DNA of 60,113 nt from Chara braunii (taxonomy: Eukaryota; Plantae; Charophyceae), in NCBI GenBank assembly GCA_003427395.1, contig BFEA01000027.1, positions 4,406,882-4,466,994 on the forward strand, in the 5' to 3' direction. Positions 12,628-59,560 of this stretch are shown here, in pieces. How positions within the stretch are numbered: the stretch's first letter is position 1; the number at the start of each line of letters is the position of its first letter. A program made the translations under genes and the position numbers. The notes under the pieces were generated by a model. The model was not told the origin of the DNA. It did no database searches and was given only the letters and a program-made list of their open reading frames with translations.

Positions 12628-15600
12628 ATGGCCGACGGTGTGTCACACGCCGTCGACGCGGCGACGACCACGGCACCGGGCTCCACACCCGTGCCGGCGG
12701 TACAGGGCCTGCAGCCCCAGGGGGATCTGCACGACCTCCTCACTTCCCTCCTCGTGCCCATTCAGGCACAACTCGCGATCCTCGCACCCCTACAGGCGCA
12801 GGTGGTGACCCTTGCTGCCGACATGCAGCAACTCCAAGACGTTGTCTGTCCTTCATCTCCTGACTCTCTCTTTTCTTCTGGTTAGCAGTCCGGGTCCCCA
12901 GTCCTCCGACAGGGTGGCCACGGTGGAGCTTCCTCCTCCGCTGGCCCCGACCCGACCATCTTGGTGACCGTCCACGCCCCTAGCACGACGGCCGCCACGA
13001 GCCAGACCCTCCCTCAGTCGACGGGCGCACCCGCCCAGATTCCGATCACTACGGCCACGAGGCCACAACCCGCTACCATGGTCTTAGCTTTTCCGGGTGC
13101 CCCGCTTCTCCCTCCCCTTCGCATGACCGCAGCGCCACCTGACTCTCCCCCCTCTAGGATGCCCCGCGCCGCTCGTGCGTCCACTTCCTCCACTCTTCCT
13201 CCTGCCATTCCTCGCTCAATCTACGTCCAACGTCTCGAGGACGAGCTTGCCCAGATCCTGGTCGACCTCGCCCTCTTACGCCTTCAGCCAGCCCCACCCT
13301 CACAGGTGGCCACAACTTCGAGTGCACCCCCTCCTTCCTCTACCCTTCCTTCCATGTAGGCTCGCTTCCCTCGCCCTGCACCTTATCCAATCCCATCCTA
13401 CCTTCTTCTCATTCCCCCGGTTGCTGGTACCTCTTCTACTGCAGCTCCCTCGCAGCCTGCCGCTGTTGCCCCCGCCGCTCCCCCGTGCGGCCCAGGCGAG
13501 CAGTCGGTTGCACCCCTTTTTCCAGAACCTGCGCCGACTTACTCAATCGTGGCACAGACCTCTGCTCCTCGATCCCCTCGCCGCCAAAACGGTGGCGCAC
13601 CACTCGTCCGCTTGACAGGCATTACCTTGTATGACGGTACAGGCATACACGTGTCTCGGTGGCTACACTCTGCCACCCGCACCCTTCAGCTCATGGGCGC
13701 CCCACCTGACACGTGGGTGGGTCACCTCTCCACGCGCCTGCGTGGCGGTCCTTTTGACGTCGGGGAGGATTTTTACGCTACTCCCTTTATGCGGGTCGGA
13801 CTCCGACCTTCATGGATTTCCAGGCGTTCCTCGAGGATCACTTCGGAGCCCGACATGACGTGACTGACGCCTTCGAGTGTGTCGTCACTACACGTTGGTC
13901 CGGCTCTGGTGGCGCTGCCGGATTGGATCGCCACATCCAGGTCTTTCAGGACGCCCGCCTCATTTGTGACGTGGCGTTCCTCCCCGAGGCTACCCTTATC
14001 GATCGTTTCTTGGCCAGCCTTCCGCTCGAGTACCGCTTCGAGTTATGGCGGTACGAGTTCACATCGGCCCCACAGGCTTACGAGGCCGCCAGGGACCATC
14101 AACGGATGAGGGTCCGTTTTCACCCCGCCTCCTCCTCCCAGCCTCAGCGCACTGGCTACGCCTCCTCCTCCTCTCACGGCACTTCCCAGCGTTGTTCCCC
14201 TTTCCGCGGTCGCCCTCGCCGTTCCGCGCAGCAGGGCCGCCACTTCTCGCGCCGCTTCAGCGCGCTCGAGTATGGTGAGCAGCGCTGTCCCCCGAGGGTG
14301 ACCATAGCGACGACCTCGACCTCGGCGAGGCCGTCCACTACCACTTGGAGGACTCTACTCTCTCTATGGCCGAGCGCCTCTAGCTCATCCTCTCCGCCCT
14401 CTCCTGGGCACGCAGACGCCCCGGTCACGCTGGCGTGTCGCCCCCCGAGGTCCCTCGACAGGACCTTCCTGAGGGCTTTGTCCCTCCTCGCGGTGTCCTT
14501 TCCGCCGAGGAGCGCGCGGCTATCTTGGGCCGGCGTGGGTGTTTGCGATGCCGCCAGGACGGTCATACCTCCTCGCGGTGCCCTTACACCACCGCCTTTG
14601 ACCGCCACTACGCTGACCTTTCCCGCCAGCGTCGTGCTCAGTCCCCCCTCGATGCCTCCTAGCCACGGTGCAGTGTGCACATGCGCCCTCCTCAGTAGTC
14701 GGCTTCCCGACATCCCTGTCGCGGTTTGCCCCTCTCGCTACTGGAGTTGAGGTCTCGCAGGACCTGATAGAGTGTACTCAGCCCTCTGTCGCAGTACCGT
14801 CTGCGCCTTCGCAGACCACCGTATCCCCTCCTACCCCGCCACGACTACCGACGCGTCGAGCCATTTGCTCAGCCCGTTGCAGCGAGCAGCTCGCTACTCG
14901 CGAGGACGTTGTATCCTCTCTTCTGGACTTGAGCATGCTCCAGGCTCGTCATGAGCGACTCACGCTCCATGTCGCTGCACTGCGTCGCCTTCTCGCCATC
15001 CTCTCTGACCCTGATCGCACCCTCCCGATCATCTTCTTACGACTGGGGACCTCCACGAGGGTGTACTCAGCGTTGTGGGATTCCGGTTCGCAGGGCGACT
15101 TCATTCACCCACGTGTGGTGAAAGAAGCCCGCTTACCCACGACAGGGTCTCTGACTTCCATCTCCGTCACCCTAGGGGAAGACAAGACCCAGCGCTTCTT
15201 CGATCAGACGGTTACCGACTTCCCTTTCTTCCTCACTCTCGAGCCGACTGATCGTCCCCCGGCGTCTCGTCGCCACCGCTCCTCCGCCACGACTTTTTTC
15301 TCGGTACTCCGTGGTCGGATCGGTTCCGCAGCATCGAGGCCGATTGGGCGACCAACACTTTCGTTCTCAAAACGAAGTGTGGACAAACGTATCGCGTACC
15401 TTTCATAGGTACCACTGCGATACCACGCCCCGATCCTCCTCCCCCGAAGCCTTCTGCGCCCACACCATCTCCTTCTATCATTGTCACCTCACCTCGGCAG
15501 TTTGCTCACTTCATCCGACAGGACGACGTCACCTTCTTTATGGTGAACGTGACGGATCTCTTACACTATGACCCACCCTGTCCCGATGCCGAGCTCATCC

Positions 15601-18025
15601 CTCTGGAGCCAGATCCTCCTTCTATCTCCATGGCTCCCATCTCTACTTTCGTCCCTCCGCCGTCCGTCGAGTCCACCCCGCCGTCTCGCGCTGACGCTGA
15701 CGCTGAGGAACTCGCACGATATACGACCGATCTAGAGCCCGCAGTTCGTGACCTCATTCGAGAGTACCACGACGTTTTCCCATCGTCGTTCTCGTACGCT
15801 GGCATCCCACCGATGCGCGACGTCAAGCACTCCATCCAGCTTGTGCCTGACTATCGTGTTCACCACCAGGCACCCTACAGACTCTCGATCCCCGAGGCCA
15901 CCGAACTCCAGCGTCAGCTTGAGGAGCTCCCGAGACAGGGTTTCATTAAGCCCAGCAACTCCCCGTGGGGTGCACCCGTCCTCTTTGCTCGCAAAGCGGA
16001 TGAAATTCTCCGTCTCTGCATCGACTATCGAGGTCTCAACCGCTACACGGTTAAGAACAGCTACCCCATGCCTCGTTCCGATGAGTTGTTCGACCGCCTA
16101 GCAGGCAACCGCTTCTTTACGAAGATTGATCTTTGTAGCGGTTACCATCAGATCCGCGTCGCTGCAGCCGACCAGCCGAAGACAGCGTTCCGATCGCGCT
16201 TCGGGCACTACGAGTTTACAGTGATGCCATTCGGCTTCACCAACGCACCCGCTACCTTCCAGAGGGCGATGAACGACATCTTCAGGGACATCCTGGAGCA
16301 GTACGTTCTCGTCTACCTCGACGATATCCTAGTTTACAGTCGTACCCTTGAGGAGCACCTCAGACACCTCCGCGATGTCCTTGACCGCTTGCGCAGACAT
16401 GACTTCTACGCCAAGCTGAGCAAGTGCCGCTTTGCCCAACACAAAGTGAATTTCTTAGGACACTATGTGTCTGACCAGGGTCTCCACATGGACGACGCGA
16501 AGATCACTACTATTGCTGAGTGACCCGTCCCCACATCCGCCAAGCAGCTTCGCAGCTTCCTAGGCCTTACCAGCTACTATAGTAATTTCATCCAGGGATA
16601 CTCTAGGTATTCCTACGTCCTTACCTCCACCCTCCTCCGGAAGAACCCGCCCTGGGCTTTGACACCCGGTCACACCCCTCCACGAGGACGCCTTCCGCGC
16701 CCTCAAGAAGGCGGTGATATATGCACCGGTTCTTCACCTACCCGATTTTGATCGCCCTTTTATCCTTACCACCGATGCGTCAAACTTTGTTGTAGGAGCA
16801 GTGTTTTCTTAGATTTTTCCCTCCTCTCCTGATTCCTCTCATCCTCGTATCCCTCGCTTCCCACCACCTACCCCTTCCCGACTGACGCCTACTCGTCCAG
16901 CTATTGGCGAGCCTTCTCTTGACTATTCTCCTACCATCCCCGAGGACGGCACTGTCGAGTCTCGCTTAGGTGATTGTCTGATAGCCTTCTACTCTCGTCA
17001 GCTCCTGCCTGCCGAGACAAACTACACCGTTGATGAACGTGATGTTATCGCAGTAGTCTATGTCGCTCGGCACTGGCGTCACTACCTGCACGGGGTACCA
17101 CTCACAGTGCACACGGACAACTCTGTTGTCCGGGCTTTTCTGACAAAACCGAAGCTCACTCCTCGACAAGCTCGCTGGTGGCGCAACCTATCCGAGTTTA
17201 GTTTCACCACTGAGCACATCAAGGGTGAGACTAATCGGGTCGCAGATGCCTTATCCCGGTGCCCTGACCACGATCAGGAGCAGATCCAACTCGCTTCCAT
17301 CTCGATCACCTCCGTCACCCACTCGGTGATCGACGAGTTTCGCACTTAGTACCGCCATTGCCCCGACTATCGCGACATCCGCGTAACCCTTCGGAGTGGC
17401 AAGACCATCCCGAACTACTCTCTCGGGGATAACGGTCTTGTGTACTAGCACGGTTCACAGGGCACCAGAGAGCCCCGTATTTGCGTTCCCTCCATTGGAC
17501 AGCTACGTGTCCGGGCAGTAGCAGAGTTCCATGATCAGGCTGTCGTCGGTCATATGGGCTTTCACAAGACGTTGGCTCGTCTGAGCTGCCTGTACGTCTG
17601 GCCGAAGCACAAGAACTTTGTGAAGGACTACGTCGCAGAGTGTCCCACCTGTCAGGAAGTGAACAGTGCGAACTACCTGCCTTATGGTTTGCTTCAGCCT
17701 CTTCCTATCCCTGAGGGTCGTTAGCAGTCCATCTCGATGGACTTTATCGGTCCTCATCGTCCTCCTACCCCCCGCAGTCATGATGTTATCCTGGTCGTCG
17801 TCGACCACTTCACGAAGCGTGCAGGCTTTGTTTCGTGTCGCTATGCCATCAGTGCACATGAGGTCGCCGACATCTTATTTGACCGAGTCGTGCGTGACCA
17901 CGACTTACCTCTGAGCATCATATGTGACCGAGACCCGCGCTTTACCAGCTGATTCTGGCGACGCCTCCACGAGGTTTACGGCACTCAGCTCCGCTTCTCC
18001 TCGTCTTACCATCCTCAGACTGATG
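12628..18025 (+). mobile_element. Ty3/Gypsy chromovirus-type retrotransposon, 5' part (gag-PR-RT-RNaseH-IN N-terminus), decayed
   Basis: Gag zinc knuckle CLRCRQDGHTSSRC (~14540). Protease ALWDSGSQGDFI (~15070). RT LCIDYRGLN, KIDLCSGYHQ, MPFG, YLDDIL (15540-16523). RNase H LTTDAS and RVADALSR. Integrase HHCC motif and SMDFI...SSYHPQTD. Multiple stops and frameshifts. Confidence 0.95.
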
Positions 18026-28744: not shown

Positions 28745-29870
28745 ATGAGGAGCAGGAGAAGTGAGTCGTGGGGAAGACATGAGCGACGAATGGGTTATGA
28801 AAGTGGGGGTTGGGATAGCGGAGATGACAGACGCGATAGAGGCAGAGAGCGAGGAAGGAGGTATGATGACCGACGGGGGTCGTCAACGGAGGACTATGGG
28901 AGAAGAAATGATGGGGGGAGGCAAGTAAAATGTTACGAGTGTGGGGAATATGGACGCTATAAGAGTCAGTGCCCCCGGCTTCAAGGAAGACTCACCGGAG
29001 GCACGATCTCTTTGAGTCGAGATCTAGAGGAGTCTCTAAGCTCAGTAGGGAGGATGACGAGGCAACTGCTAGAACAGCAAAGGGAAGCGGAAGAAGTCAA
29101 GCGAGAGGCCGAGAAAATGAACAAGAAAGAAGCGGAAGAGCGAGAAGCAAGGGAGGAAGAAGCGAGGGTCACGTTGCAGAAAAAGTTGGCTAAGGAAGAG
29201 AAGGAGAAGAAAAGAAGCTGGGAGTTGAAAAAGTTGTTAGTGGAACAGCGTGAGGAATACGAGGCGAAATTGGACAAGGTTGTGGGCCTGAGTCGGAAGA
29301 TGAAAGGAGTCTCAATTGGAAGTAAGAAGAAAGAGAAGGCAAATGTGACTCCGGTGATGAGCTCCAAAGATGAGGAAGAGACCGAAGAAGAAGCTATGCC
29401 CCTTAAAGATAAAAGGAAGCGGAAGAATTCGACGGGGGAGGTGGAAAATAGCCCGCCGGTTGAAACTCCCAAGAAAATGGGGAAGAATGTTGAAGTTGAG
29501 ACGCTGACGGGCCAGAAGAGAAAAGGACGAGGAAGGCCGACCAAAGCGGAGGCTCAAGCAACTCGAGTAATGAAGGGCGAAGACCCATGGGAGGGAGTCC
29601 CTGTGGGGGAGAAATTTGCCACTGAAGCAGCATACAGGAGGCGGTCAGGAAAGCCATCGGATCTTTTATCCGGAGACACTGAAAGCGATGTGCAAAGGGG
29701 CAGGTCTACCGTTCTACGGGGTGAACGACGATGTGGACACACTGTCCGAGCTACGCGTCACGTACTGCTATCGGGGTCAGAAGACGTCGTGTTCAACGTC
29801 AAGCAAGTCTGAGGAGGAAGATCAGATAAGGGGCGAATCCCAGGATCCGCAAGGAAAGGCAGACGAGTAA
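28745..29870 (+). pseudogene. ORF1-like region of the Penelope-like element (zinc knuckle, coiled coil, AT-hook-like), frameshifted near the 3' end
   Basis: RD/RG-rich N-terminus, CYECGEYGRYKSQC, E/K-rich helix, KRKGRGRPTK. Confidence 0.6.
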
Positions 29871-52380: not shown

Positions 52381-53502
52381 TCATGGCCATTGCCAGAATA
52401 CTTTGAGTTGGTGAGATTTCTTCTCCGATCCCGCAGATCCTGGATCGCGATCGTCCCCGTTCCACGAGCCACAGCCATTACGTGTGCCCCACGATCCACT
52501 CTCCACGTTTGCCCCCCAGGACCCACAAACCGCGGTGCCAGTCCCACTCCACGATGCCGGCCCTGCTATGGTCCCGTCCCATGAGCTGCAGTCAGCGCTC
52601 CCGCTGCAGGATCCGGCTCCACCCCATGACCCAACCACTTCAGTATCGCTGAGGTCTTCTGCCCTCATCGGGCCCATGCTACCTGACACAGATGACAAGC
52701 CACCCCAAGAGCCGACCATAGCCTCGAAATTGCTAACGCCCCCGCTGACTGCCTTCTTCACTCCTACATTGCCGGACACCAACGACGGTTCAACTCCACG
52801 AACAAATATTGCAATCTGCGTAGCATATCCTTCATCCCCTGGGGGACCGCCATTCAACACTCCTACCCCATCGAACCACACTGTGTACCCATGTTTCACA
52901 GCAAGAGGCGTTGCCCATTTCCTGAATTCTTCTCGAGTCCATTCGAACCGGTGGTCGTCGTTCCTTAGCTTCACAGTGGACCAGTCCTCTGCAATTCCTC
53001 GCTTACTAGCAACCCCATTCTTCTGCTGGGAGGGGGAACCACTGGCACTTGTACACCTCTGATCAACGGTTGAATGAGAGGTGGGGCTACTACGCAGGGC
53101 CTCTTCAAGGCCTCCAATCACTCGGTTGCCGCCTCCCACCCGACAACGTGCAGTTTGATCCGCCCGTCCGCTTGACGATTCCTTCCTGCAAGAATTACCA
53201 CTGCCCGCTGGAACAACTCCACCCTGAGAAGCTCCAATACCAGTGCTTTCCTTGTTTGCAGCAAGAGTGACCGCATTCGATGACGAAGAGACTCCGCCAG
53301 ATTCGAAGGACAATGGTGGCTGAATGCTGTTCCGGACAACTCCACCACCTCCTTCCCCCTTTCTCTGTGTTCGCCTCTCAGCAAAAAACAGAGGGTTGAA
53401 CTCAATGTTCGGCGTGGACACGATGAGCACCCTAGGCATCATTCCCCCGAGAACGCTGTCGCCAACCTTCACAAGATCCTCCTCATCCATATGCTCGACG
53501 AC
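52381..53502 (-). CDS. HEN1: Small RNA 2'-O-methyltransferase HEN1, last coding exon
   Basis: ttgcag|VVEHM, STPNIEFNP, LRNDDHRFEWTREEF.KWA, FDGVG, GYATQIAIF, terminal KVFWQW. 1122 bp open frame, phase 0. Confidence 0.95.
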   Translation of the reverse strand, partial: VVEHMDEEDLVKVGDSVLGGMMPRVLIVSTPNIEFNPLFFAERRTQRKGEGGGGVVRNSIQPPLSFESGGVSSSSNAVTLAANKESTGIGASQGGVVPAGSGNSCRKESSSGRADQTARCRVGGGNRVIGGLEEALRSSPTSHSTVDQRCTSASGSPSQQKNGVASKRGIAEDWSTVKLRNDDHRFEWTREEFRKWATPLAVKHGYTVWFDGVGVLNGGPPGDEGYATQIAIFVRGVEPSLVSGNVGVKKAVSGGVSNFEAMVGSWGGLSSVSGSMGPMRAEDLSDTEVVGSWGGAGSCSGSADCSSWDGTIAGPASWSGTGTAVCGSWGANVESGSWGTRNGCGSWNGDDRDPGSAGSEKKSHQLKVFWQWP

Positions 53503-54056
53503 CTGCAAATGCATCCAACATGCTCAGTGCCCAATGTGAATCACACAGTCCATGCTGGCGCACACCCCGGTAGAGACCCTTTATGCCGCACACGAAAAGA
53601 AGAAGAACAACTGCACCGCAAACAACTGAGCCTACAGACTCTTCCCACTGAGCACAGGGAAAGATGACCATAATAGCACAGAAATCAATAGAGAGCTATA
53701 TATAATATATATACAATATCCTTCTCTGCCTTTATGCTGAGAAGATGACATTTGTTCTGGGAACTTCTGACCAGTTTTCCTCCCTCGCTCCATTTCACAA
53801 CGTTCTACATGCACTTGGACACTTTCTGGACCGATAAATTCAAAAACTTTGGAATTGTCACAATGCACCTGGTCCAGAAACCGTCCAGATGCATGTAGAG
53901 TGCTGTGTGGTGGAGCGAGGCCCTATATGTCATCCCTGGTCATTTGGAAACAAAACAAACAAACAAACAAACAAACAAACAGAAAAAAACAGAGGGCAAA
54001 ACAAAACCAGCAACGCCACAGGCTTCGAGTCATGAGCTGTGGATGAAGGGCATTAA

Positions 54057-54658: not shown

Positions 54659-54691
54659 TCTTATACACATCTAGATGTGTATAAGAGACAG
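54659..54691. other. Nextera mate-pair junction adapter (assembly artefact)
   Basis: tcttatacacatct-agatgtgtataagagacag is two inverted Tn5 mosaic ends. Confidence 0.97.
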
Positions 54692-55096
54692 GTGTGTGTG
54701 TGTGTGAGAGAGAGCCTGCTTCCAACAACAGAATGAAACCACCACAACCTTGCAGGGTCACCTTTCTCCCGAAGTAGCTGTGGTTTGTCAACCGGATCTG
54801 TGCTTATGTGTGTGAGAGAGAGAGGGGGGCAGCATGGCTATGTAGGACGTGCTCATGCACCGTAGCTGAGAGAAGAGAGAAAAAGGGGGTATGGACCGAA
54901 TCTCACAATACCGGATTGGTAAACAGAGAGAGATTATTGGGCATAACAACCCTGACCTCATAAATCGCAGAACTAGGAATTTCACCCAAATGTCCCAAAA
55001 AGTTGCAAAACACAGCTATGGGGAAAAAGTACGAAAAAGTTGAAAACTTCAAAAAAAAGGAAAACAAAACAAAAAGACACACGCCAAAAAACTCAC

Positions 55097-55237
55097 CTCA
55101 AGGCAGGTCGCGAGATCGAATCCACGCAACCTGGCATCTGGTTCATTTATAGATCCCTCATACAGCACAATAGACTCGGGCAATGACGATGCCCTGCAAA
55201 CTGATGCCTCACTATCTGTGACCTTTGTCTTGAGCAC
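55097..55237 (-). CDS. HEN1: HEN1 penultimate coding exon
   Basis: ttctcag|VLK...IVLYEGSINEPDARLRGFDLATCLE|gtgagt. 141 bp, phase 0/0; joins to form CLEVVEH. Confidence 0.93.
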
Positions 55238-59446: not shown

Positions 59447-59560
59447 TTTCGCTCCTCTTTGCAGTCCCTTTCCAGAAATATCAATGCCGGCCACATGTTT
59501 CACAGGCGAATGACCAACAACTGCCTCCAATAACGATGCAGCACCGCAACCTAAATCAAT
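59447..59560 (-). CDS. HEN1: HEN1 exon with SAM-binding motif I (upstream exons lie beyond the window)
   Basis: tttacag|IDLGCGAASLL...VAGIDISGKGLQRGAK|gtaagc. 114 bp, phase 0/0. Confidence 0.93.

What the first reader, a model, noticed from the sequence alone, without database searches (positions are those of the whole stretch)
52455..52717. HEN1 carries a WG/SW-repeat insertion resembling an Argonaute hook
Seen: between GYATQIAIF and the terminal KVFWQW lies a ~130-aa G/S-rich stretch with seven spaced Trp motifs: GSWGG, GSWGG, SSWDG, ASWSG, GSWGA, GSWGT, GSWNG. Established: WG/GW repeats in G/S/D/N-rich disordered sequence are the AGO-binding platforms of NRPE1, SPT5L/KTF1, SDE3, GW182 and Tas3. 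Angiosperm HEN1 methylates duplexes before AGO loading and has only a short linker here, while animal Hen1 acts on Argonaute/PIWI-bound single strands. Inference: this HEN1 may dock directly on AGO, coupling 2'-O-methylation to loading or acting on AGO-bound RNAs, which I am not aware of in green-lineage silencing. As an internal control, the other low-complexity insertion in the same exon has no such Trp repeats.
Basis: partly seen in the sequence, partly recalled or inferred. Interest (0 to 1): 0.85.

Follow-up and report, generated by a model that had tools for sequence, protein, structure and literature searches.

The report
Algal HEN1 with Argonaute-hook loop
In the alga Chara braunii, the enzyme that adds a protective methyl group to small RNAs has an extra floppy loop with seven tryptophan motifs like those that grip Argonaute proteins; no other plant version checked has it, and binding is untested.

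Summary
The last exon (53502-52381, minus strand) of a plant-type HEN1, almost certainly of Chara braunii, has a 133-aa loop before the final strand. In 40 plant and algal homologues the loop is at most 49 aa (median 24). Its seven Trp all follow Ser (p=1e-5); only four are canonical WG. RNA contigs and stranded reads run through it unspliced. Across the motifs, codon positions 1 and 2 agree (0.74, 0.69) but position 3 is random (0.25), so the motif is kept as protein. It is predicted disordered and scores 50.7 on a re-implemented published WG/GW score (p about 3e-5); the control insertion reaches 12.7. Conservation in other Charales could not be tested; no sampled streptophyte has it. Side result: short Hen1 proteins of early-diverging fungi and some protists end in Gly-flanked Trp tails (15 of 18 with three or more Trp), at a different position. 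Best reading (0.55): a tether to Argonaute, most likely for duplex hand-off. Binding is untested. I found no paper on hooks in HEN1; the scan had not noted this on other DNA.

The parts
52381..53502 (-). Last coding exon of HEN1 (373 codons plus stop): second half of the methyltransferase domain with two long insertions
   Evidence: acceptor AG ends at 53503; RNA contigs and reads
52405..52803 (-). 133-aa G/S-rich loop between the strand ATQIAIF and the terminal strand, with seven Ser-Trp motifs
52426..52632 (-). Core WG/GW-type segment (exon residues 291-359, six Trp, three WG), dos score 50.7; the first motif (residues 264-268) scores apart, 10.1
   Evidence: using the matrix of PMC2910046
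52384..52404 (-). Terminal KVFWQWP, matching the conserved last strand of plant-type HEN1
   Evidence: W370 nearly invariant
52975..53385 (-). Control insertion, 137 aa, S/G-rich, one Trp; four differences in the contig of run X13, three of them amino-acid changes
55097..55237 (-). Penultimate exon (47 codons, ends DLATCLE), inferred from homology and splice signals
59447..59560 (-). Exon with the SAM-binding motif I (DLGCG), 38 codons; the gene continues beyond the window

Best explanation
The loop is a small Argonaute-binding platform that arose inside the methyltransferase domain of Chara HEN1. Shown: an expressed, in-frame, disordered loop with seven G-S-W-[G/D/S/N]-G-like motifs whose amino acids are kept while synonymous positions are randomised, in an enzyme with intact catalytic motifs. 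Inferred: pairs of Trp about 10 residues apart enter the tandem Trp pockets of an AGO PIWI domain and tether HEN1 to AGO. Further inferred: since the enzyme is of the plant, duplex-preferring type, the tether most likely hands freshly methylated duplexes to AGO or methylates duplexes during loading; work on AGO-bound single strands is the less likely branch.
For: Ser-Trp motif far above chance. Codon positions 1/2/3 identity 0.74/0.69/0.25 against null 0.34/0.27/0.25. Unspliced in RNA of three studies. pLDDT under 50 over nearly all of residues 253-351. dos 50.7, 'medium' class, above all 37 plant/algal HEN1 tested and the highest six-frame score in the window. G and W frequencies (0.21, 0.053) are close to the reference platforms (0.213, 0.063). 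The host protein works in the AGO pathway, and C. braunii has AGO hooks on its NRPD1/E1 homologue (PMC11194755). Short Hen1 proteins, the type that in animals acts on AGO-bound RNA, often end in G-flanked Trp tails. No change in the loop in run X13 against four in the control (p=0.12, weak).
Against: No binding data. Only four canonical WG, not above compositional chance. Four Cys and 13 Val are atypical (matrix). The score has known false positives such as glycine-rich proteins and hornerin, and its second filter (ics) could not be computed. No relative with the same loop was found. The same exon has a second long low-complexity insertion, so insertions are easy here. Whether Chara AGOs keep Trp pockets was not tested.
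Confidence: 0.55

Rival explanations
1. The Trp motifs are functional but do not bind AGO: they act as aromatic stickers that bring HEN1 into small-RNA processing bodies, or dock on another Trp-binding partner (for example a deadenylase or Dicer-complex subunit).
For: Evenly spaced aromatics in a G/S-rich disordered loop; the invariant feature is Ser-Trp rather than WG; the zebrafish Hen1 C-terminal region directs it to nuage (PMC3330095).
Against: Stickers are usually Tyr/Phe-rich (own knowledge), whereas this loop has 7 W, 1 F, 0 Y, the pattern described for AGO platforms. The two roles need not exclude each other.
Confidence: 0.22
2. A neutral, lineage-specific expansion: a short unit was duplicated several times in a tolerant surface loop and has no binding role.
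For: All seven Ser codons are TCN (p=0.037 against other Ser of the exon), which fits descent from one unit; a second long insertion lies in the same exon, and Closterium has a long insertion at that other site too; absent from all sampled relatives.
Against: Neutral decay would hit all codon positions alike; here position 3 is random while the single-codon residue Trp and its neighbours persist. No tandem repeat is left at DNA level.
Confidence: 0.18
3. Artefact: the region is intron, mis-assembled or spliced out of the main transcript.
For: The assembly has gaps and an adapter remnant 2 kb away; no annotated protein holding this exon was found.
Against: Two independent RNA contigs span it without gaps, stranded poly(A) reads cover it, no joints were reported, and the intron upstream has zero depth over 53541-53748. 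Read depth is low (3-12x), so rare isoforms are not excluded.
Confidence: 0.03

Closest known systems
Plant HEN1 (Arabidopsis, PDB 3HTX)
   Same: Methyltransferase motifs DLGCG, ExxEH, TPNxEFN, RNxDHxFEW, QIAIF and the terminal WxW strand.
   Different: The loop before the last strand is 133 aa with seven Ser-Trp motifs instead of about 24 aa; the other loop is 137 aa instead of about 30.
WG/GW AGO-binding platforms of NRPE1, SPT5-like/KTF1, SDE3, GW182, Tas3
   Same: Disordered, G/S/W-rich, repeated Trp with small flanking residues; passes the dos score.
   Different: Short (about 70-90 aa), four canonical WG, an internal loop of an enzyme domain rather than a terminal tail, contains Cys; binding untested.
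Short-type Hen1 of animals, fungi and protists (HENMT1, DmHen1/Pimet)
   Same: Same catalytic domain; the animal C-terminal region is reported to mediate PIWI contact and nuage anchoring (PMC6158503); many fungal and protist members end in Trp repeats.
   Different: Their Trp tail follows an extra folded domain at the C-terminus (model), is acidic, and is not homologous in position to the Chara loop.

Membership tests
HEN1 small-RNA 2'-O-methyltransferase | Rossmann methyltransferase domain with HEN1-specific motifs | tested here: met
   3HTX E=2.5e-19 and human HEN1 E=2.7e-18 by sequence; top fold hits
HEN1 small-RNA 2'-O-methyltransferase | Metal-binding Glu/Glu/His/His and SAM motif I intact | tested here: met
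   CLE|VVEH, DH and DLGCG present; residue roles from own knowledge
Plant (long) HEN1 | Domain at the C-terminus, ending in the WxW strand | tested here: met
Plant (long) HEN1 | N-terminal dsRBDs, La-motif domain and PPIase-like domain | not testable with these tools
   upstream exons lie beyond the window end
WG/GW Argonaute hook | Repeated WG/GW dipeptides | tested here: inconclusive
   four WG of seven Trp; count not above compositional chance, Ser-Trp is
WG/GW Argonaute hook | Platform composition (dos score over 6.99) | tested here: met
   50.7, p about 2.6e-5; re-implementation reproduces two published p-values
WG/GW Argonaute hook | Internal composition score (ics under 2.14) | not testable with these tools
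   reference table is in a supplement that is not held
WG/GW Argonaute hook | Intrinsic disorder | tested here: met
   pLDDT under 50, no secondary structure; the alignment has no rows over the loop, so low confidence is partly expected
WG/GW Argonaute hook | Trp conserved among relatives while spacers diverge | tested here: inconclusive
   no Charales homologue retrieved; absent in more distant streptophytes; internal codon pattern fits
WG/GW Argonaute hook | Trp-dependent binding to AGO | not testable with these tools
   needs pull-down or complex modelling

The most novel reading that the evidence does not exclude
Hen1 enzymes reach Argonaute through Trp hooks more widely than recognised: short Hen1 proteins of early-diverging fungi, some protists and probably some animals carry them as a C-terminal tail, plants lack them and use dsRNA-binding domains, and Chara gained a hook independently inside the catalytic domain. 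This would name a motif in the C-terminal region so far described as lacking predicted motifs.
Probability: 0.35. Interest if true: 0.85.

Novelty: new variant of a known kind. Interest (0 to 1): 0.66.

Why it matters
Plant HEN1 is held to methylate duplexes before AGO loading, animal Hen1 to act on AGO-bound strands through a C-terminal region with no known motif (PMC3840309, PMC6158503). A plant-type HEN1 with an AGO hook in a close algal relative of land plants would show methylation and loading physically coupled in the green lineage. The Trp tails seen here in fungal and protist Hen1 give a direct test, by Trp-to-Ala pull-down, of how Hen1 finds loaded Argonautes.

Tried and rejected
Pfam found nothing on the exon or loop. 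The ESM Atlas gave no hit for the loop. No DNA-level tandem repeat and no second copy in the window, so a recent duplication or a local transposon source is unsupported. Searches for Charales relatives failed: representatives, word search, two metagenome scans (mostly bacterial Hen1). The single-exon ORF is not an annotated protein on record. WG/GW counts in Klebsormidium and Closterium HEN1 come from N-terminal regions, not this loop. Selection bias for Trp tails in the first hit list was tested and rejected, and a second set was chosen on the catalytic domain alone. Mesotaenium, Spirogloea, Closterium and K. nitens were excluded as source because their HEN1 differ. Ten paper searches found no report of hooks in HEN1; subscription papers are not covered, and three key papers were not held.

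Full report
Setting. The finding lies on the minus strand, in an exon from 53502 to the stop at 52381. It matches the second half of the HEN1 methyltransferase domain (Arabidopsis 3HTX, E=2.5e-19), and HEN1 structures are the top fold hits. Two more exons were located by translation and splice signals, 55237-55097 and 59560-59447 with motif I; the gene continues past the window end. The catalytic motifs are intact. The organism is almost certainly Chara braunii: a retrotransposon protein encoded at 15540-16523 clusters at 90% with two C. braunii proteins. That is an inference, not a label.

Observation. Between ATQIAIF and KVFWQW lie 133 residues with seven Trp, each preceded by Ser, consensus G-S-W-[G/D/S/N]-G. 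In shuffles of the loop, seven Ser-Trp has p=1e-5. The four canonical WG are not above chance given 21% Gly (p=0.34), so the signal is the whole motif, not the dipeptide count. The other insertion of the exon (137 aa, similar G/S content) has one Trp at its edge. In 40 plant and algal homologues the loop has a median of 24 and a maximum of 49 residues, with 7 Trp in 1,071 residues; the alignment shows the Chara loop as unique among those sampled. Mesotaenium, one unnamed sequence and one fern-like sequence have one or two WG/GW there, too few to count.

Expression. Contigs from two studies, probably RNA, run through the exon without gaps and leave the genome at the acceptor; stranded poly(A) reads of a third study cover the loop on the expected strand at 3-12x in one run; no joint was seen inside the exon and the intron next to it has no depth. 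One contig differs at five places: four in the control insertion (three amino-acid changes), one silent in the core, none in the loop (p=0.12, only suggestive).

Is the motif selected? No tandem repeat remains in the DNA. For the four codons flanking the seven Trp, pairwise identity is 0.74, 0.69 and 0.25 at positions 1, 2 and 3, against 0.34, 0.27 and 0.25 for random codons of the loop. All seven Ser codons are TCN. This fits old duplication or repeated origin of a short unit whose amino acids were kept while silent sites drifted, and is hard to reconcile with a neutral repeat.

Does it look like a hook? AlphaFold2 leaves the loop unstructured, with the caveat that no homologue covers it. I re-implemented the dos score of Karlowski et al. 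(PMC2910046; matrix); it reproduces their p-values for the threshold and for SDE3. Residues 291-359 score 50.7 (p about 2.6e-5, their 'medium' class); the control's best segment is 12.7, the best of 37 plant and algal HEN1 is 25.9 in an N-terminal region, and nothing in six frames of the window scores higher. The paper itself warns of false positives and uses a second filter that I could not compute. Cys and Val are more frequent than in typical platforms. C. braunii carries hooks on its Pol IV/V-like subunit (PMC11194755), so this docking mode probably exists in the species.

A wider pattern. Among the hits, short-type Hen1 proteins of chytrids, Blastocladiomycota, Mucoromycota, a basidiomycete, an aphelid, Chromera and Gefionella end in acidic tails with spaced Trp. 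In a set chosen on the catalytic domain alone, 15 of 18 tails of 25 residues or more have at least three Trp; Trp is 4.4% against 0.67% in the other Hen1 insertion, and Gly is about threefold enriched on both sides (the sequences are related, so the p-values overstate independence). Of 52 short-type proteins, 21 have Trp in the last five residues, and the query's own Trp loop did not bias their retrieval. A model of the Rhizophlyctis protein shows the tail (435-534) disordered after an extra folded domain, while the strand that seems to match the plant terminal strand comes much earlier. The Chara loop is therefore at a different place and most likely arose independently. Animal Hen1 acts on AGO-bound strands, and its C-terminal region, described as lacking predicted motifs, appears to mediate PIWI contact (PMC3840309, PMC6158503). 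This raises the prior that Trp repeats on a Hen1 serve to reach Argonaute, but it is correlation only.

Mechanism. Most likely (0.55) the loop tethers HEN1 to AGO by Trp insertion into the PIWI pockets (pocket mechanism from own knowledge). [quoted passage not shown] Rivals: a non-AGO partner or condensate sticker (0.22), neutral expansion (0.18), artefact (0.03).

Novelty. Both components are known; their union in a plant-type HEN1 was not found in ten paper searches, which miss most subscription journals. The main gap is the lack of any Charales relative and of binding data. Verdict: real, expressed and apparently selected; a new variant of a known kind; interest 0.66.

Noticed in passing
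P0182, P0073, P0183, P0188, P0180, P0049, P0143, P0111, P0106, P0097, P0147, P0126 (C-terminal 60-180 aa): Short-type Hen1 of early-diverging fungi, an aphelid, Chromera and Gefionella end in acidic, Gly-flanked Trp repeats that resemble AGO hooks; not found described in the papers searched.
   Followed up: partly
P0194, P0197-P0201; also P0092, P0107, P0110, P0115: Mucorales Hen1 end in a conserved acidic motif with Trp as the last residue; several other short-type Hen1 end in Trp-Asp.
   Followed up: partly
P0182 residues about 310-430: A confidently predicted folded domain (helices and strands) lies between the catalytic domain and the Trp tail in fungal Hen1, with a conserved W..LRIRQ.CK motif; no fold search was run.
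   Followed up: no
window 54660-54692: Nextera mate-pair junction adapter sequence inside the assembly, between dinucleotide runs in the HEN1 intron: a local assembly artefact.
   Followed up: partly
window 53783-53900: Intronic dispersed repeat; many diverged RNA reads and contigs from other copies land here on both strands.
   Followed up: no
window 28745-28830 (+): The N-terminus of the ORF upstream of the Penelope-like element has one SWG and one GGW motif; its dos score stayed under 20. Earlier notes report longer GW runs in other copies.
   Followed up: partly
window 51914-51990 and 52178-52254: A near-identical stretch of about 75 nt occurs twice, about 265 nt apart, downstream of the stop codon (seen by eye), next to a 41-nt poly-C run at 52299-52339.
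   Followed up: no
P0011 (Closterium HEN1): Carries a 146-aa Ala/Gln-rich insertion without Trp at the same site as the Chara control insertion, so that loop expands independently in algae.
   Followed up: partly
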